The notes under the pieces were generated by a model that saw only the letters and a program-made list of their open reading frames with translations, did no database searches and was not told the origin of the DNA. A DNA stretch of 64,000 nucleotides, taken from the sequence record MT995927.1. One strand, written 5' to 3'. Numbering within the stretch: position 1 is the stretch's first letter; each line of letters opens with the position of its first letter. The position numbers were made by a program, and so were the translations under genes. Below are positions 8,056-53,198 of this stretch, one piece after another.

Positions 8056-10299
8056 ATGAGCGTACATGCCCTAAGAGAACTGTTTAAACACAAAGGCGAA
8101 AAGAAATACGAAGTCTTCTCAATGGAAGATTTCATTGGTCGCCTAGAAAGTGAAATTGGTCTAAATGACAGCGTTGTTAGTCAAGGTCGTTCCCTTGTTA
8201 GCACCATTTCACATGAAAACTTCGGTACCGTACAAGCTACCGACGTTCAAGATGCTGCTGCAATTTATAACAAAATGCAAATGCTCGTTAACGACTATGG
8301 TTTCGAACGAGTAAGCTCCAGTGATCCTCAAGTACGCGCTCGTGAAGAACGTGTCCGTGAGAACCAGATCACCGCTGCTACCATGGCTGCTATCGCCTGT
8401 GCTGATGAAACTAAATATATCCGTGCACTACGTGGTATTACCAAAGCTAAAGCTTCTAATGAAGATCATGTTAAGGTTGTACAGCATCAGTTCAATGGCC
8501 CCGCTGGTGGCATTCAAGTATTCGAAAATGGTGTTGGCCTAGAGAACTATAACGAGAAGTCACAGCGTGATTTCCGTGTTGTAACTATTGGTTATAACCT
8601 AGCTGCTAGCCGTCAAGATGAATTCGCTGAGCGTATTTATCCGACCACCGTTATCAACCCGATTGAAGGTGGTGTTGTTCAGGTTCTTCCTTACATCGCT
8701 GTAATGAAAGACGTTTACCACGAAGTATCCGGCGTTAAAATGGATAATGAAGAAGTGAACATGGTAGAAGCCTATCGTGATCCTTCCATCCTCGACGACG
8801 AAAGCATTGCGCTAATTCCTGCCCTAGATCCGGCTGGCTCCAATGCTGACTTCTTCGTAGACCCGGCTCTTGTTCCTCCGTACACCATCAAGAACGAGCA
8901 GAACCTAACTATCACTACTGCTCCGCTAAAAGCGAACGTACGTCTTGATCTAATGGGTAACTCCAATGCTAACCTACTCATCCAGCGTGGCATGCTTGAA
9001 GTTTCTGACACCATTGATCCGGCTGGTCGTCTAAAGAACCTATTCGTTCTACTCGGTGGTAAAGTTGTTAAGTTCAAGGTTGACCGTCTACCTCGCGCTG
9101 TGTTCCAGCCCGATCTAGTTGGTGATACCCGGAACGCTGTTATCCGTTTCGATAGCGACGATCTAGTTGTTAGTGGCGATACCACTTTCATCGATGGTTC
9201 AGCTGACGGTGTTATCAATGATCTTAAGACCGCTAAACTAAGCCTACGTCTAAGCGTTGGTTTTGGTGGTACTATCAGCCTATCCAAAGGCGATTCTAAG
9301 TTTGGTGCTACCGACACTTACGTCGATAAAGTTCTAAACGAAGATGGCCAGGTAATGGATAATGCTGACCCGGCTGTTAAAGCTATTCTAGATCAGCTAA
9401 CTGACCTAGCTGTTATCGGTTTCGAACTAGATACTCGCTTCACCAACACTAACCGTCGTCAGCGTGGTCACCTACTACAGACCCGTGCACTACAGTTCCG
9501 TCATCCGATCCCGATGCACGCTCCTGTAACTCTACCGATGGACACCATGACCGATGAAGGTCCGGGTGAGGTTGTTAAAGCTCTAACTGTTAACACCAAC
9601 ATCCGTAACAGCAACAACGCTGTTAAGCGCATGCTTAACTACCTTGCTCAACTACGTGAAGTTGTACACAATGGTTACAACCGTCCGAAGTTTGGTATCA
9701 TCGAAGGTGCACTATCCGCTGTAATGCGTCCGACCTATCGTTACAAAGAACTAGATCTTGAGAAAGTCATCGACACCATCAAGTCTAAAGATCGTTGGGA
9801 CGACGTTTGCGCTGCGATCCTAAACTGTGTTAAAGCTGAGCTATTCCCGGCTCACCGTGATTCCAACATTGAAGCTGCCTTCCGTGTTATCTCCGGTAAC
9901 CAGGATGAAACTCCGATGTATCTCTTCTGCTCCGACAAAGAGATTGCTAACTATCTAATGACTAAAGGTGACGACCGTACTCTAGGTGCTTATCTCAAGT
10001 ACGATATCGTTTCCACCAACAACCAGCTATTTGATGGTAAGCTAGTTGTAATTCCGACCCGCGCAGTACAACAAGAAAACGACATCCTCTCCTGGGGCCA
10101 GTTCTTCTACGTATCTACTGTTATCGCTGACCTACCGATCACTCGTGGTGGTCACCAGGTTACTCGCGAAATCGCGGCCATTCCGTTCAACCTACACGTC
10201 AACAACATTCCGTTCGCGCTAGAGTTCAAGATCACTGGCTTCCAGAAAGTCATGGGCGAAACTCAGTTCAACGGTAAGCTTGCTGATCTTAAGCCGTGA
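8056..10299 (+). CDS. gp120: Major capsid protein (phiKZ gp120-like)
   Basis: 747 aa as recalled for gp120; strong codon bias; N-terminal propeptide ending at the prohead-protease-type site GLE|NYNEKS. Confidence 0.95.
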   Translation: MSVHALRELFKHKGEKKYEVFSMEDFIGRLESEIGLNDSVVSQGRSLVSTISHENFGTVQATDVQDAAAIYNKMQMLVNDYGFERVSSSDPQVRAREERVRENQITAATMAAIACADETKYIRALRGITKAKASNEDHVKVVQHQFNGPAGGIQVFENGVGLENYNEKSQRDFRVVTIGYNLAASRQDEFAERIYPTTVINPIEGGVVQVLPYIAVMKDVYHEVSGVKMDNEEVNMVEAYRDPSILDDESIALIPALDPAGSNADFFVDPALVPPYTIKNEQNLTITTAPLKANVRLDLMGNSNANLLIQRGMLEVSDTIDPAGRLKNLFVLLGGKVVKFKVDRLPRAVFQPDLVGDTRNAVIRFDSDDLVVSGDTTFIDGSADGVINDLKTAKLSLRLSVGFGGTISLSKGDSKFGATDTYVDKVLNEDGQVMDNADPAVKAILDQLTDLAVIGFELDTRFTNTNRRQRGHLLQTRALQFRHPIPMHAPVTLPMDTMTDEGPGEVVKALTVNTNIRNSNNAVKRMLNYLAQLREVVHNGYNRPKFGIIEGALSAVMRPTYRYKELDLEKVIDTIKSKDRWDDVCAAILNCVKAELFPAHRDSNIEAAFRVISGNQDETPMYLFCSDKEIANYLMTKGDDRTLGAYLKYDIVSTNNQLFDGKLVVIPTRAVQQENDILSWGQFFYVSTVIADLPITRGGHQVTREIAAIPFNLHVNNIPFALEFKITGFQKVMGETQFNGKLADLKP

Positions 10300-10380
10300 G
10301 CTGGAAAGGGTTACCGTTATCTAGAAAATGGGACTATCCGTTATTTGGAAGACGGTAATGCCCGGAAGTTAGAAGAGTAA
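10300..10380 (+). other. Candidate stop-codon readthrough extension of the major capsid protein (26 aa)
   Basis: In frame after TGA: AGKGYRYLENGTIRYLEDGNARKLEE-TAA, ends just before the terminator. Confidence 0.6.
10315..10344 (+). repeat. 30-bp direct repeat, copy 1
   Basis: CGTTATCTAGAAAATGGGACTATCCGTTAT, identical to 35966-35995. Confidence 0.95.
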
Positions 10381-10389
10381 CAGACATAG

Positions 10390-10409
10390 GCCCTCCCTTC
10401 GGGGAGGGC
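10390..10409 (+). terminator. Terminator of the capsid transcript
   Basis: GCCCTCCC-TTCG-GGGAGGGC followed by TTTAT. Confidence 0.85.
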
Positions 10410-10420
10410 TTTATGTTGTA

Positions 10421-10452
10421 TTACATTAAAAAAAGTTTAAGATCTATATTAC
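10421..10452 (+). promoter_or_regulatory. phiKZ-type early promoter (A tract plus TATTAC)
   Basis: TTACATTAAAAAAAGTTTAAGATCTATATTAC, 31 of 32 nt identical to 62126-62157; TATTAC is the reported early promoter core. Confidence 0.8.
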
Positions 10453-10495: not shown

Positions 10496-10948
10496 ATGAA
10501 CGTTCAATTATTTCCAGAAGTCATCGAAAGATGGCAAGATGCCCTAAGGGTATCTCTTATAGAAAAAAATACCATGGTAGATAATAAGATGTCTACCGTA
10601 GATGATGATAAATACATTAATACTTTCTTTGAAGAATTCCATCCTGTTCAGGATGCCTTTATGCCCAAAGGGCTAGAGGACTTTATTACTGATTATGCCA
10701 AGAAAAACATTGAGGAGATCCTTCAAGAAAAACAGTTTAAGCGGGCCACCGAAAAGTTATATTGTTCGAGTGACCCGCATAAATGGCAGAAATCAAGTAA
10801 TAAGGAAAAGAGTGAATCCTTTAAGGGAAGGTCCGTACATCAAACTAAAAAGAGGCTCCCCAACATTGTAGATTTGGAGGCCGTTGTGATTAAGGTAGAT
10901 TTCAATGGTAACACTAAAAATTGCGGGGCTTACTCAAGTATCAGTTAA
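10496..10948 (+). CDS. Hypothetical early protein (gp121-like)
   Basis: 150-aa ORF behind the early promoter, AGGT RBS. Confidence 0.7.
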   Translation: MNVQLFPEVIERWQDALRVSLIEKNTMVDNKMSTVDDDKYINTFFEEFHPVQDAFMPKGLEDFITDYAKKNIEEILQEKQFKRATEKLYCSSDPHKWQKSSNKEKSESFKGRSVHQTKKRLPNIVDLEAVVIKVDFNGNTKNCGAYSSIS

Positions 10949-16605: not shown

Positions 16606-17049
16606 TTAACTGCTTTCAAATTCAAGAGTTACTGGTATTGTTGGTATCCACGACAAGTTATTAAAGTATGGATGTATCGTAACCGTATTCCCAGTAATAG
16701 GTTGCGGTTGTATCTCATCTATAATAAATGGAATACCGTAAACATCTCTTAATTTTTCAGCTACTTCTAAATTATCAGTATAGTCAGTTGGTTTACCCGG
16801 TACTTTTATACCAAGACAGTACTCTGGTAAAGAGCGTCTATTAAAGTAAATAACTGTCTCACCTTTAAAATAAAGTGAACTGGTCTTCGCTCTCATTGTT
16901 GTTTTGGCATTTGTACCAGTTGCTAAGAATGTATCAGTCCCTATAAATTCAACATCATCAACAGTTAAATCCCTAGGCTTACCATTATTATCTTTAGGTT
17001 TATTAGCCACATTCCAAGCAGCTACTAATTCAGCTCTTGTATCAGCCAT
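16606..17049 (-). CDS. Virion structural protein (gp126-like)
   Basis: 147 aa; YFNRRSL motif resembles gp127/gp143/gp158-like proteins. Confidence 0.7.
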   Translation of the reverse strand: MADTRAELVAAWNVANKPKDNNGKPRDLTVDDVEFIGTDTFLATGTNAKTTMRAKTSSLYFKGETVIYFNRRSLPEYCLGIKVPGKPTDYTDNLEVAEKLRDVYGIPFIIDEIQPQPITGNTVTIHPYFNNLSWIPTIPVTLEFESS

Positions 17050-17057
17050 TACACACC

Positions 17058-17930
<873 letters not shown>

Positions 17931-33688: not shown

Positions 33689-34252
33689 ATGCTTAAGCTT
33701 CCAGCGAGTGATGAGCCATTTCGGGTACTAGCATTAGACCCTGGTTCACAAAACCTCGGCATAGCTATTCTGGAAGATAAGTTGGATGGAAGTAATAAGG
33801 TGGTACGTAATGCATTTACTTGCCACCTTAAAGATACAAATCCGGCATATGCTGCCATTTCCGAGGTTCATGGTAGTAGATTCACTAGAATGCAGCAAAT
33901 GAGTGATGTGGTACTAAATATACTGCATACAGAAAAGCCACATGCAGTGATTGTAGAATCTAACTATCTTGGTAAGTTTGCCCAAAGCTTCGCTGTACTT
34001 GTAGAATGTGTAACCTATGTACATAGAGCATTATACGAGTATGATAGATTTATACCTTTATACATGATTGATCCGACCACAGTTAAGATCAATGCTGGTA
34101 TGAAAAAAGTAAAGGGCACTACTAAAGACGATGTTAAAGAAGCAATGCGCTCTCGTACTGATATCACATGGAATATCGACATAGATAGTTTAGATGACCA
34201 CTCCATGGATGCTTGTGCAATAGCTTACTACTACCTTACTAGGATTGTTTAA
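33689..34252 (+). CDS. ruvC: RuvC-like Holliday junction resolvase (gp140-like)
   Basis: VLALDPGS...G.AIL, VIVES, PTTVK, DH..DA.AIA catalytic acidic motifs. Confidence 0.85.
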   Translation: MLKLPASDEPFRVLALDPGSQNLGIAILEDKLDGSNKVVRNAFTCHLKDTNPAYAAISEVHGSRFTRMQQMSDVVLNILHTEKPHAVIVESNYLGKFAQSFAVLVECVTYVHRALYEYDRFIPLYMIDPTTVKINAGMKKVKGTTKDDVKEAMRSRTDITWNIDIDSLDDHSMDACAIAYYYLTRIV

Positions 34253-34267
34253 CAATTCGAGGTAACA

Positions 34268-34774
34268 ATGTTCCTATTAGCAGGTATACGAAAAATAATT
34301 GGTAGTGTGCCATTGCATATATGGTTACTATTAGTTATTCTGATAGGTGCCTTAATTGGTATCATATATTACAAAAATAGTTATGAGACGGAACTTGTTC
34401 GCTCTACAGATTTAATTGGAAAAATTAAATCTTATGAAGCGGCAGAAAAGGTTAGGATTGAATCAGACCGTATCTCCGATAAAATTCAAGCTGAACTAAT
34501 TACTAAAAAGAAAGAGATACAAAAAGAGCAGGCGCAATCACGCACTGAGGTGATTGATGAGTACATTAGTTTATCAGGTCGTGGATATACTCCCCCTGTA
34601 TGGCCTGAGGTTAAAGCTAAAACAACTAATGGGGAAAGTACCACTACTGAGATTAAACATGAAACTGACACAAAAAAAGATAGCATTAATAAGTCTATTA
34701 ATGTTATTGCTAAACGGATGTACGAGCACTACTGTGCCGCCTCCCGTGAAAATACCAGTTGCAATCCCAAGTAG
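34268..34774 (+). CDS. Putative inner-membrane spanin (i-spanin)
   Basis: N-terminal TM helix, then a helical/coiled periplasmic region with C-terminal Cys; overlapped by a lipoprotein gene; near the endolysin. Confidence 0.65.
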   Translation: MFLLAGIRKIIGSVPLHIWLLLVILIGALIGIIYYKNSYETELVRSTDLIGKIKSYEAAEKVRIESDRISDKIQAELITKKKEIQKEQAQSRTEVIDEYISLSGRGYTPPVWPEVKAKTTNGESTTTEIKHETDTKKDSINKSINVIAKRMYEHYCAASRENTSCNPK

Positions 34775-35021
34775 TTTGCTTCTCCCTTGTGATGTAGAAG
34801 CCCCACCTACAGCTAATGAGATCATCAATGCATTAGATAGATATAAAGCTGTTGGGGTTACTGATGAGAATGAAGCACGTTTCTTACTTATGACCGAACA
34901 TTGGCTTTTACAAACTGATGCACTTGGACTATGTAATATCCAAGTAGACAAATTGCGTGAATGGAACGAACGTCAACGTAATTTGGAGAATAGTCATGAC
35001 CCTAGAGGACGTTCTGATTGA
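34659..35021 (+). CDS. Putative outer-membrane lipoprotein spanin (o-spanin)
   Basis: Start moved to ATG 34659: MKLTQKKIALISLLMLLLNG|C lipobox, Pro-rich stretch after the Cys; overlaps the i-spanin in the +1 frame. Confidence 0.7.
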   Translation: MKLTQKKIALISLLMLLLNGCTSTTVPPPVKIPVAIPSSLLLPCDVEAPPTANEIINALDRYKAVGVTDENEARFLLMTEHWLLQTDALGLCNIQVDKLREWNERQRNLENSHDPRGRSD

Positions 35022-35391
35022 GATCGATGGTAATCCTTTATCTTCTTCTAAAGACTATGGAAAGAAGATACGTACCTATTTAAATAGCGTATTGGAAAAG
35101 GAACAACGTATAAATCTAAGTATAACTGGTGAAGAAGTACTTAGTCGAATTTATGCTATTACTGATTCAGATCTTCAATATAAAATTCTCAGCCGGGAAA
35201 TTGCTGAAGTGAAGGCTAAAGATTCTTACCGTAATGCGGTATTAGTATTAGCTGGTGGTGTTACTCTTATTGGGGCATCAGTATCTACTATGGTAGTTTT
35301 ATCTGGCGCACCTATGTCAGAAGAAAGTGCCAATGTGTTAAAGACTATTGTGCAAGGTACCTTTGAATTAATAAAGATGCTTATGCAATAA
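34996..35391 (+). CDS. Membrane protein, holin/antiholin candidate
   Basis: Start moved to ATG 34996 (GGAG RBS); hydrophobic segment AVLVLAGGVTLIGASVSTMVVLSG. Confidence 0.5.
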   Translation: MTLEDVLIEIDGNPLSSSKDYGKKIRTYLNSVLEKEQRINLSITGEEVLSRIYAITDSDLQYKILSREIAEVKAKDSYRNAVLVLAGGVTLIGASVSTMVVLSGAPMSEESANVLKTIVQGTFELIKMLMQ

Positions 35392-35473: not shown

Positions 35474-36007
35474 ATGCAGGATATCTTTCCGTATGACATG
35501 GCATCGAGGGACGCGCTAGTAAAACTTGCGCGGGATGATTTAAAAATAAACTTCAAACCAGAAACAGTTACATTTGAAGATATGTTTTTTAGTCCAACCA
35601 CGATTGAGCCTGGACGTACATTTATTGAAATGATCGACATTACTACTGACATTAAGTACATGTTAACTTACCGTCGGTTAGATTTTGCTGATCCACGAGC
35701 TATTGGTGAAGGATCTATCCTTAAGATAGTTGGTACTTTAACACCTAAAGCAATTGCTGAAGAAATCAACCGTTCACGGGGTTGGAAGCTTGGACCAGAT
35801 GATGTTTCATTTGATACAACACCAATCAATGCAACTACGGATGTTGTTCCATACACGATAGTAGCTATGTCGAGTAGTTATGCTTACTATGGCGAATGTA
35901 ATATACTAATTCAACGTATTGATGACACATCAGATACTATCCGGCTATTAGAGAATGGCGCAGCACGTTATCTAGAAAATGGGACTATCCGTTATCTAGA
36001 AAGTTAA
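35474..36007 (+). CDS. Virion structural protein with C-terminal RxLE(N)G repeats (gp143-like)
   Basis: LTYRRLDF family motif; ends RLLENGAARYLENGTIRYLES. Confidence 0.8.
   Translation: MQDIFPYDMASRDALVKLARDDLKINFKPETVTFEDMFFSPTTIEPGRTFIEMIDITTDIKYMLTYRRLDFADPRAIGEGSILKIVGTLTPKAIAEEINRSRGWKLGPDDVSFDTTPINATTDVVPYTIVAMSSSYAYYGECNILIQRIDDTSDTIRLLENGAARYLENGTIRYLES
35966..35995 (+). repeat. 30-bp direct repeat, copy 2
   Basis: Identical to 10315-10344. Confidence 0.95.
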
Positions 36008-36029: not shown

Positions 36030-36851
<822 letters not shown>

Positions 36852-52224: not shown

Positions 52225-52247
52225 TATATTAATCTAAAGGTGGCGCA

Positions 52248-53198
52248 ATGCGTAGATTCACTCTTAATCTGGCGGATAACCCGCGTGGACAAGATCCACG
52301 AATAGGTTTCTTCAAAGCAGTTACAACAGCATATCCGGATTTAGGTTTATCTGAAGATAAGTCCATTATCGTAATGGTAATGGATAGTGCAACTATCGAT
52401 GAGCCTAATAGGGCATTTGTTCGTATTCAAAAAGATGCAACTAATAGTGCTGTTTATTACGACTTTCTTTATAATCGTTTTAATGTTAATGATTATATTA
52501 AAAATCCATATTGGACAGCATCGGAAGTAACGGTTGTTCAAGGATTAAAAAATAGCGAAGCTTTAGTTGCGTATGTTGCTAATAAAGCTAAATTAAATTT
52601 TACTGCTAGTGACATATGGTTAGAAATATCTAATATAACGTATACCGGTGGTAAGAAACAACCAAACTTTTTATTTAAAGCTATTGATTCATCACTATGG
52701 TGGAGAGGATGGTTAAATCTATGGTTACATTCAGGTGGTGATGTTGACCCTGATCCGCCGGACCCAGATCCAGATCCTGATCCAGAACCAACAGATGGCT
52801 ATCAGATATTCCCGCAATTGCTTGTACCATTTACAATTACAGTTGATAATGAAACAGGTAAATTTGGTAATTGGATTTGTCCGCCTTATGATCAAGCTAT
52901 AGGTAGGCTATTGGTACTAATGCCTAAACCAGATGATGCTCAAATAGAAGAGTCACCTAAAGGTGTTATACTACCTTCTGGCAATAGCGAGAAACTTAAG
53001 GCTGGTGCTGAATATCGAATACTGAATTTAACTAATGAAGATGTCGATATAGCTACTGCTTATCAACAGAGTATCATTAGGCCAATGTATACAAGTACTG
53101 GTTTCTTACCTAATAATGGCTATACTCGATTTATCTGTTATAATGAAACAACTAAAGCGATGTATACACTTGGTCTGTCATGGTGGATGCAATCATGA
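52248..53198 (+). CDS. Two-domain virion protein with Pro-Asp linker (gp158-like)
   Basis: FLYNRFN family motif in the N-domain; DPDPPDPDPDPDPEP linker. Confidence 0.75.
   Translation: MRRFTLNLADNPRGQDPRIGFFKAVTTAYPDLGLSEDKSIIVMVMDSATIDEPNRAFVRIQKDATNSAVYYDFLYNRFNVNDYIKNPYWTASEVTVVQGLKNSEALVAYVANKAKLNFTASDIWLEISNITYTGGKKQPNFLFKAIDSSLWWRGWLNLWLHSGGDVDPDPPDPDPDPDPEPTDGYQIFPQLLVPFTITVDNETGKFGNWICPPYDQAIGRLLVLMPKPDDAQIEESPKGVILPSGNSEKLKAGAEYRILNLTNEDVDIATAYQQSIIRPMYTSTGFLPNNGYTRFICYNETTKAMYTLGLSWWMQS

What the first reader, a model, noticed from the sequence alone, without database searches (positions are those of the whole stretch)
35930..36007. RxLE(N/D)G peptide tag shared, with 30 identical bp, by gp143 and the cryptic capsid extension
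Seen: the gp143-like protein ends DTI-RLLENGAA-RYLENGTI-RYLES, an 8-residue period. Nucleotides 35966-35995 are identical to 10315-10344, including synonymous positions, and are read in the same frame at both loci 25.6 kb apart. Synonymous identity implies recent copying or gene conversion. Same-frame use implies selection on the peptide. Inference: a portable docking tag on two virion components. A candidate ligand is the nearby fibre protein gp145, whose KISQLP-type N-terminus resembles phage appendage proteins that, from my recollection, often occur near LE(D/N)G-repeat proteins.
Basis: partly seen in the sequence, partly recalled or inferred. Interest (0 to 1): 0.7.

Follow-up and report, generated by a model that had tools for sequence, protein, structure and literature searches.

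The report
Leaky stop extends jumbo-phage capsid protein
In phiKZ-like giant Pseudomonas phages the major capsid gene ends in a conserved UGA stop followed in frame by a conserved 24-30 codon tail, so a few capsid subunits probably carry a small three-repeat peptide module that also ends the lysis regulator gp143.

Summary
Bases 35966-35995 equal 10315-10344 (30/30, none expected by chance), in the reading frame of gp143 and in the frame of the capsid gene after its stop.

The window is Pseudomonas phage U1B (Phikzvirus), bases 124001-188000. The main result concerns the capsid gene.
- In 23 diverged relatives the capsid gene ends in TGA, followed in frame by 24-30 codons. These carry three R-x-x-E-(D/N/S)-G type repeats.
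- In the 21 first analysed, frame 0 has 0 stops in 575 codons, against 29 and 28 in the other frames. The extension's own stop varies.
- Eight relatives without the tail all end in TAA. The two states are interspersed on the capsid tree.

This is the signature of programmed UGA readthrough, not previously reported as far as I could find.

The same tri-repeat ends every gp143-family protein, and its R and E are among only 14 invariant columns. It occurs nowhere else in the 283-kb genome.

The 30-bp identity is local. phiKZ and PA7 differ by four adjacent bases, so a short gene-conversion patch in this sublineage is likely.

Translation of the extension and its binding partner are inferred, not shown. 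The proposed gp145 ligand has no support.

The parts
8056..10299 (+). Major capsid protein gene (phiKZ gp120 type, 747 aa), ending in TGA at 10297-10299
   Evidence: ORF list. 100% match to PDB 8y6v gp120. Annotated as major head protein in phiKZ.
10297..10299 (+). Conserved UGA stop, the proposed leaky (readthrough) stop
   Evidence: TGA in 23 of 23 relatives that carry the downstream tag, TAA in 8 of 8 that lack it. The next base is A or G in 20 of the 21 first analysed. In the window, long open frames end in TAA 23, TGA 6, TAG 3 times.
10300..10380 (+). In-frame post-stop extension: 26 codons (short G/K-rich linker plus three R-x-x-E-x-G type repeats) and its TAA stop
   Evidence: Translation. 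Conserved at peptide level in PhiPA3, PA1C, Viktualia, 201phi2-1, Phabio, Psa21, RVTF4, Noxifer and metagenomic relatives. 0 stops in frame 0 against 29 and 28 in the other frames. Scores 33.9 bits against the gp143-tail profile.
10315..10344 (+). 30-nt block identical to 35966-35995
10388..10420 (+). Intrinsic-terminator-like hairpin and T-rich tail after the extension; the extension therefore lies inside the capsid transcript
   Evidence: A hairpin followed by a CTTTATG-type motif is conserved in 20 of 21 relatives.
34996..35391 (+). gp142 holin gene (context: reported partner of gp143)
   Evidence: Position taken from the phiKZ annotation and the window offset. Function from PMC12894885.
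35474..36007 (+). gp143 gene (177 aa): globular body (residues 1-150) plus tri-repeat tail
   Evidence: phrog_2935, E 2e-45. AF2 mean pLDDT 85.6. Reported as lysis regulator in PMC12894885.
35942..36004 (+). Tri-repeat tail of gp143 (residues 157-177)
   Evidence: R157, E160, R165, E168 and R173 are invariant, and G162 and G170 nearly so, in 51 family members. The tail is present in the full-length family clusters.
35966..35995 (+). 30-nt block identical to 10315-10344
35983..35986 (+). Four adjacent bases that differ from phiKZ and PA7 and create the 30-nt identity; likely a short gene-conversion patch
   Evidence: Six of the 27 differences to phiKZ over 1131 nt fall in the 63-nt tail (binomial P 0.003).
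36069..36851 (+). gp144 endolysin / virion transglycosylase (context)
   Evidence: PG_binding_1 plus SLT domains. Located at the neck whisker in PMC13250141.
17058..17930 (-). gp127, a baseplate outer-peripheral protein; its N-terminal half is a structural paralogue of the gp143 body
   Evidence: Foldseek top hit 9xqd_0, E 2e-6, TM 0.59/0.69. 9xqd_0 is PHIKZ127. phrog_1037 and phrog_2935.
16606..17049 (-). gp126-like paralogue of the gp143 body, without the tail
   Evidence: phrog_2935 E 4e-35, covering profile positions 10-154 of 180. hmmsearch.

Best explanation
Shown by sequence comparison:
- In the Pseudomonas phiKZ-like clade the capsid gene ends in an invariant UGA.
- It is followed in frame by a conserved 24-30 codon open frame under its own purifying selection. 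This frame encodes a short linker and three R-x-x-E-(D/N/S)-G type repeats.
- The same tri-repeat is the invariant C-terminus of the gp143 family.

Inferred mechanism:
- A small fraction of ribosomes read through the UGA. The phage encodes no suppressor tRNA, so a near-cognate host tRNA is the likely decoder.
- A few of the 1620 capsid subunits per head would then carry the tail.
- The capsid C-terminal arm sits at the capsomer centre and touches the outer protein gp244 at the vertices. The tail would therefore be exposed on the capsid surface.
- The tri-repeat is a small self-contained module, probably a three-strand beta-meander held by R-E pairs, that serves as a binding handle.
- Capsids and gp143 would then engage one common partner. 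That partner is not gp143's need for the capsid tag, because gp143 keeps its tail in a phage whose capsid gene lacks the tag.

The 30-bp identity in this window is a local, recent gene-conversion patch from the capsid extension into gp143.
For: Stop codon and frame:
- 23 of 23 tag-bearing relatives have TGA, 8 of 8 tag-less relatives have TAA, and one has TGA followed by a Big_2 ORF.
- The states are interspersed on the capsid tree, which implies at least 3 correlated switches.
- Among 21 distinct sequences, frame 0 has 0 stops in 575 codons against 29 and 28 in the other frames. Frame 0 is open in 21 of 21, against 2 and 3 of 21.
- The extension's own stop varies: TAA 13, TGA 5, TAG 3.
- Pooled pN/pS is 0.57, with R, E and G columns conserved, while pS is 0.62.
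- None of 120 capsid cluster representatives has the tag fused through a sense codon, so the stop itself is kept.

Alternative routes to translation:
- No conserved start codon lies in the extension.
- The genome's tRNAs are Asn, Asp, Met, Pro, Leu and Thr only.

Same module in gp143:
- The extension scores 33.9 bits (E 1e-8 genome-wide) against a profile of gp143 tails from other phages.
- The tail's R and E residues are among 14 invariant columns of gp143.
- The extension is no closer to its own genome's tail than to other genomes' tails (0.53 against 0.53), so it is not merely refreshed by conversion.

Context:
- The tri-repeat also occurs as 2-4 tandem modules in unrelated proteins. One lies in a P22-like head gene cluster.
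- Geometry of the capsid C-terminal arm: PMC11297242.
- gp142 and gp143 homologues are found in virions by mass spectrometry.
Against: - There is no direct evidence that the extension is translated. I found no proteomic or ribosome-profiling report.
- No conserved RNA structure after the UGA was found that would stimulate readthrough.
- The AF2 tail has only moderate confidence, pLDDT 66-75.
- The 3.5 A capsid model ends at residue 747 and reports no extra density at capsomer centres. A rare extension would, however, be averaged out.
- The partner of the tag is unknown.
- gp143 is non-essential in TnSeq.
- The published AF3 model of the holin contact uses gp143's first domain, not its tail.
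Confidence: 0.72

Rival explanations
1. The post-stop frame is an untranslated copy of the gp143 tail. It is kept open because gene conversion from the functional gp143 tail repeatedly overwrites it.
For: In this window a conversion-like patch makes 30 nt identical. Even phiKZ and PA7 share 17 nt between the two loci.
Against: - Outside Phikzvirus the two loci share no more sequence within a genome than between genomes: 5-9 nt, and peptide identity 0.53 against 0.53.
- The extension has features absent from gp143: a G/K- or P-rich linker and characteristic last repeats.
- The linker between TGA and the first repeat has no gp143 counterpart, yet it stays in frame and free of stops in 23 of 23.
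- The strict link between TGA and the tag is unexplained by this model.
- In Phikzvirus the extension is the near-invariant copy and gp143 the variable one.
Confidence: 0.08
2. The conserved region is an RNA or DNA element (3'UTR stability element, regulator site or readthrough-independent signal) and the peptide pattern is incidental.
For: In the window the region folds well as RNA (-29 kcal/mol, z -3.1). It sits just upstream of a conserved terminator.
Against: - The consensus structure across 21 sequences is negligible at -3.1 kcal/mol, with only 5 pairs.
- No Rfam family matches.
- Nucleotides diverge (pS 0.62) while R, E and G columns and the frame are kept. Stops are excluded from frame 0 only.
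Confidence: 0.07
3. The UGA encodes selenocysteine, directed by a SECIS hairpin just downstream.
For: UGA is invariant. In the window a hairpin begins about 12 nt after the UGA.
Against: The hairpin is not conserved in relatives. Its pairing follows from the repeated R and D-G codons. No Rfam SECIS match was found. Hosts span several Pseudomonas species, and I did not check whether they have selenocysteine machinery.
Confidence: 0.03
4. The extension is a relic of an ancestral longer capsid protein cut short by a nonsense mutation, and it is decaying neutrally.
For: Some distant relatives have longer, linker-like capsid C-termini.
Against: Synonymous divergence among lineages is high, yet the frame is open in 23 of 23 and the motif columns are kept. 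The other frames accumulate 28-29 stops. Where the tag is lost, the stop has also changed to TAA.
Confidence: 0.05

Closest known systems
Q-beta A1 (readthrough) protein of ssRNA coliphage
   Same: A UGA at the end of the coat gene is occasionally read through by a host tRNA. This gives a minor coat protein with a C-terminal extension displayed on the capsid. Both the stop and the downstream frame are conserved. (Comparison from established knowledge, not tested here.)
   Different: Here the virus is a 280-kb dsDNA tailed phage with a T=27 HK97-fold capsid. The extension is only 24-30 residues, not about 200. Its product has not been observed.
Recoded capsid extensions in dsDNA phages (T7 gp10A/10B and similar frameshift products; Ig-like domains added by frameshifting)
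   Same: A minor, C-terminally extended form of the major capsid protein is made by translational recoding and exposed on the head.
   Different: Those cases use -1 or +1 frameshifts at slippery sites. Here the extension is in frame 0 behind a stop. The window's extension has no Ig-like domain. Only the relative L026 has a Big_2 ORF after a TGA, and that ORF also has its own ATG.
Luteovirus-type coat protein readthrough domain (plant viruses)
   Same: A leaky stop gives a minor coat-extension protein that serves as an interaction handle on the particle. (From general knowledge.)
   Different: Unrelated virus type and host. The extension there is large, and the readthrough signals are known RNA elements, which were not found here.
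gp126/gp127 family (phrog_2935, phrog_1037, Pfam DUF7941) of phiKZ baseplate proteins
   Same: The gp143 body matches phrog_2935 at E 2e-45. Its model superposes on the N-terminal half of gp127 in the baseplate structure 9xqd.
   Different: gp143 replaces the C-terminal half of gp127 with the tri-repeat tail. gp126 lacks the tail. gp143 scores below the Pfam cut-off for DUF7941 (18.3 against 27 bits). It is reported as a lysis regulator.
Holin regulators (antiholins such as T4 RI/RIII, P1 LydB)
   Same: gp143 changes the triggering time of the holin gp142 when co-expressed (PMC12894885).
   Different: No sequence or fold relation to those proteins was seen here. The role of the tail in regulation is unknown.

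Membership tests
Programmed stop-codon readthrough of a coat gene (Q-beta A1 type) | Leaky stop codon (UGA) conserved at the end of the coat gene | tested here: met
   TGA in 23 of 23 tag-bearing relatives, TAA in all 8 without the tag
Programmed stop-codon readthrough of a coat gene (Q-beta A1 type) | In-frame downstream ORF conserved as protein | tested here: met
   0 stops in 575 codons in frame 0, against 29 and 28 in the other frames. Motif columns are conserved. pN/pS 0.57.
Programmed stop-codon readthrough of a coat gene (Q-beta A1 type) | Extended protein present as a minor species in infected cells or virions | not testable with these tools
   No proteomic or ribosome-profiling report found
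Programmed stop-codon readthrough of a coat gene (Q-beta A1 type) | Sequence or structure context that favours readthrough | tested here: inconclusive
   The base after TGA is A 14, G 6, C 1, never T, in the 21 first analysed. The last residue is P, A, G or V. No conserved downstream hairpin.
Selenocysteine recoding | Conserved SECIS hairpin directly after UGA | tested here: not met
   Consensus fold -3.1 kcal/mol with 5 pairs. No Rfam hit.
Programmed ribosomal frameshift capsid extension (T7 10B type) | Extension encoded in the -1 or +1 frame behind a slippery site | tested here: not met
   The extension is in frame 0. Frames +1 and +2 are closed by stops.
Ig-like capsid decoration domain | Big_2 / I-set / FN3 domain in the extension | tested here: not met
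   The 26-residue extension holds no such domain. Only L026 has Big_2 (36.7 bits) after its TGA.
gp143 family (phrog_2935) | Full-length profile match | tested here: met
   E 2.1e-45, profile positions 1-179 of 180
Pfam DUF7941 | Score at or above the gathering cut-off (27 bits) | tested here: not met
   18.3 bits for the window protein. Distant family members pass, for example 37.4 bits.
Holin-specific lysis regulator | Alters holin triggering time; binds the holin cytoplasmic domain | not testable with these tools
   Taken from PMC12894885 only

The most novel reading that the evidence does not exclude
The tri-repeat is a shared address label. The rare readthrough capsid subunits and the lysis regulator gp143 (with the holin gp142 bound to its body) would compete for, or gather at, one partner. 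The amount of assembled capsid would then feed into the timing of lysis. This would also explain why the lysis proteins gp142 and gp143 turn up in purified virions.
Probability: 0.12. Interest if true: 0.9.

Novelty: new variant of a known kind. Interest (0 to 1): 0.8.

Why it matters
phiKZ is the reference jumbo phage. Its capsid has been solved at 3.5 A and its genome re-annotated many times, yet no record annotates this extension. Only one record, Viktualia, annotates an ORF over this stretch, and it is in another frame.

If the extension is translated, this would be programmed stop-codon readthrough in the major capsid gene of a tailed dsDNA phage. I know that mechanism for capsids mainly from ssRNA phages and plant viruses.

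It would add a sub-stoichiometric, surface-exposed component that symmetry-averaged cryo-EM cannot see. It would define a new small peptide module that is also found in other phage head proteins. It would also give a concrete, testable link between the capsid and the recently described lysis regulator gp143.

For annotation, it shows that a TGA at the end of capsid genes in this clade deserves a recoding flag.

Tried and rejected
- Further copies of the tag. None were found in the window or in the whole U1B genome, by regex or by profile.
- Phage suppressor tRNA. None was found.
- Sense-codon variants of the capsid stop. None among 120 cluster representatives.
- Conserved RNA structure or SECIS. 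None was found.
- Within-genome co-variation of the two tags. None outside the window's sublineage.
- gp143 in solved structures by sequence. No match. Only the fold search found the gp127 relation.
- gp121-like ORF (10496-10948) and ORF 52233-53198 in the PDB. No match.
- gp139 as the 9xqd match. Rejected: it belongs to DUF7208 and is unrelated to gp143.
- Co-fractionation proteomics paper. Only peak counts for PHIKZ143 and PHIKZ120 are held.
- L026 as an independent readthrough case. Left ambiguous, because an ATG lies two codons after the TGA.
- Modelling the capsid protein joined to its extension. Not done, because sequences read through a stop were not to be built. The 26-residue piece is also too short for the structure tool.
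- gp145 as ligand. No test was possible and there is no supporting evidence.

Disclosure: in my reasoning I recalled a few short consensus motifs from memory. They were the RTX repeat, the phiKZ prohead-protease cleavage pattern, a late-promoter TATG motif and SECIS loop features.

Full report
**Identity of the window.** The window matches Pseudomonas phage U1B (MT995927.1, Phikzvirus) from base 124001. ORF 8056..10299 is the major capsid protein. It is identical to gp120 of PDB 8y6v. ORF 35474..36007 is gp143. It lies between the holin gp142 and the endolysin gp144.

**Observation.**
- gp143 ends in three 8-residue repeats.
- Bases 35966-35995 equal 10315-10344 over 30 of 30 positions, with no other match at up to 3 mismatches and none expected by chance.
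- The second copy lies 15 nt after the capsid TGA (10297-10299), in the capsid frame. That frame stays open for 26 codons, to TAA at 10378-10380.
- A terminator-like hairpin follows at 10388-10411.

**What the capsid copy is.** A tblastn search with the 26 post-stop residues found the same peptide directly after the capsid stop in PhiPA3, the PA1C group and Viktualia. It also found the peptide at the end of gp143 homologues in Noxifer and Phabio.

I then collected capsid 3' ends from IMG/VR, GenBank phages and metagenome assemblies.
- In 23 distinct relatives the capsid gene ends in TGA. It is followed in frame by 24-30 codons: a short linker, then three repeats with conserved R, E and G.
- Among the 21 sequences first analysed, frame 0 has no stop in 575 codons. 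The other two frames have 29 and 28 stops.
- The extension's own stop varies (TAA 13, TGA 5, TAG 3), whereas the capsid stop is always TGA.
- Synonymous difference is high (pS 0.62), with pN/pS 0.57 and the motif columns kept.
- Eight relatives lack the tag, and all eight end in TAA.
- On a neighbour-joining tree of the capsid C-terminal region the two states are interspersed. L023 (tag) is sister to L056 (none). L054 and L058 (none) are sister to the large tagged clade. Noxifer (tag) sits on the other side. This implies at least three correlated changes of stop codon and tag. The tree is a quick distance tree, and its deep branches are not robust.
- None of 120 capsid cluster representatives has the tag fused through a sense codon, so the stop is kept as well as the frame.
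- The extension has no conserved start codon, the phage has no suppressor tRNA, there is no conserved hairpin after the UGA and no Rfam match.

Taken together this is the comparative signature of programmed UGA readthrough. I found no report of it, but the paper library is incomplete. Translation itself is inferred, not shown.

**What the gp143 copy is.** gp143 belongs to phrog_2935.
- The full-length cluster representatives of its 54 protein clusters, down to 34% identity, end in the same tri-repeat.
- In an alignment of 51 members only 14 columns are invariant. Five of them are the tail's R157, E160, R165, E168 and R173, and G162 and G170 are nearly invariant.
- AF2 gives a confident body (residues 1-150, pLDDT about 90). 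The tail has moderate confidence (66-75) and shows beta-bridges every 8 residues.
- The body superposes on the N-terminal half of gp127, a component of the baseplate outer periphery (9xqd_0). It is also related to the tail-less gp126-like protein.
- The literature reports gp143 as a cytoplasmic regulator that binds the N-terminal domain of the holin gp142 (PMC12894885). It is non-essential in TnSeq and absent from the cryo-EM atlas.
- Homologues of gp142 and gp143 were nevertheless found in virions by mass spectrometry.

**Relation of the two copies.** A profile built from gp143 tails of other phages scores the capsid extension at 33.9 bits. That is nearly as good as gp143's own tail at 35.8 bits. 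Nothing else in the 283-kb genome scores, so the two are the same module and it occurs exactly twice.

Across nine genomes the extension is no closer to its own genome's gp143 tail than to tails of other genomes (0.53 against 0.53). Shared nucleotide strings are 5-9 nt both within and between genomes. The two copies therefore evolve independently under a common constraint.

The window is the exception. phiKZ and PA7 differ from it at four adjacent bases (35983-35986), changing one residue, and share only 17 nt with the extension. Six of the 27 differences to phiKZ over 1131 nt fall in the 63-nt tail (P 0.003). The extension peptide is unchanged in 37 of the 45 listed Phikzvirus records and differs only at its last residue in the other 8. 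A short conversion patch from the extension into gp143 in the U1B/T2P/U5 sublineage is the simplest reading.

**Wider distribution of the module.** A profile search of 1.84 billion proteins found the tri-repeat as two to four tandem modules, separated by Pro/Gly linkers, in unrelated proteins (P0213, P0272, P0297). P0272 lies just upstream of the scaffold and major head genes of a P22-like head cluster. The tri-repeat is therefore a portable mini-domain of phage-associated proteins.

A gp143-family gene with the tail lies on the same contig as L030, whose capsid gene ends in TAA without a tag. The gp143 tail therefore does not depend on the capsid tag.

**Mechanism proposed.** Rare readthrough would place a few tagged subunits in each head of 1620 capsid proteins.

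The capsid C-terminal arms form a six-helix bundle at hexamer centres, and at the vertices they reach the outer protein gp244 (PMC11297242). The tag should therefore be exposed on the outside.

The invariant R and E, spaced three apart, and the D/N-G turns fit a three-strand beta-meander with cross-strand ion pairs. This is my inference, and the AF2 bridges support it only weakly.

The module most likely acts as a binding handle for a partner common to capsids and gp143. I could not identify that partner.

**Rivals.** I considered an untranslated copy refreshed by conversion, an RNA element, selenocysteine insertion and a decaying relic. Each fails to explain at least one of three facts: the frame-specific absence of stops, the independent divergence of the two copies, or the strict link between TGA and the tag.

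**Limits.**
- All evidence for translation is comparative.
- The tree is approximate.
- L026 (TGA followed by a Big_2 ORF) is ambiguous, because that ORF has its own ATG.
- I recalled some short consensus motifs from memory while reasoning and used none of them.

Noticed in passing
window 10388-10425; same position in L001-L023, L043, L044: After the extension, a GC-rich terminator hairpin is followed immediately by a conserved CTTTATG(Y)(Y)GT-type motif in 20 of 21 relatives. This may be a combined terminator and promoter or start signal.
   Followed up: no
L026 2272-2886: In one distant relative the capsid gene ends in TGA behind a Thr/Gly/Asp-rich linker. A 203-codon in-frame ORF with a Big_2 Ig-like domain follows (36.7 bits). 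An ATG two codons after the stop leaves open whether this is readthrough or a separate gene.
   Followed up: partly
P0118-P0174 (capsid relatives at 58-70% identity): Many distant capsid proteins end in low-complexity Thr/Pro/Gly/Asp/Glu-rich, linker-like tails that stop after T-P. In the loci I read, these are followed by TAA and nothing recognisable.
   Followed up: no
window 16606-17049 (-), 17058-17930 (-), 52233-53198 (+): The gp143 body has paralogues in the same genome: a gp126-like protein, gp127 (baseplate) and, weakly, a 321-aa ORF. gp143 thus looks like a baseplate-type domain that acquired the tri-repeat tail.
   Followed up: partly
P0213, P0272, P0297; L059 4804-5361: Tandem arrays of the tri-repeat module occur in unrelated proteins. 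One also has FG-GAP beta-propeller repeats. Another lies next to the scaffold and major head genes of a P22-like phage contig.
   Followed up: partly
window 10308-10365: In this phage only, the extension RNA folds into a long hairpin (-29 kcal/mol, z -3.1). The hairpin forms by pairing of the repeated Arg and Asp-Gly codons and is not conserved in relatives.
   Followed up: yes
window 33689-34252 and 34268-34774: Two ORFs upstream of the holin give sub-threshold Pfam hits to RuvC and to a Holliday-junction-resolvase-like endonuclease family (E about 0.006-0.01, below the cut-offs). This region is described as spanin genes in the literature, so the hits are probably noise.
   Followed up: no
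P0093-P0097: JGI names several capsid-protein homologues 'virulence-associated protein VapD'. This looks like a mis-annotation of PhiKZ_MCP family proteins.
   Followed up: no
L005 1478-1576 (Viktualia): The record annotates a 32-codon 'hypothetical protein' that overlaps the capsid stop in a different frame from the conserved extension. It is probably a spurious call that masks the real in-frame extension.
   Followed up: partly
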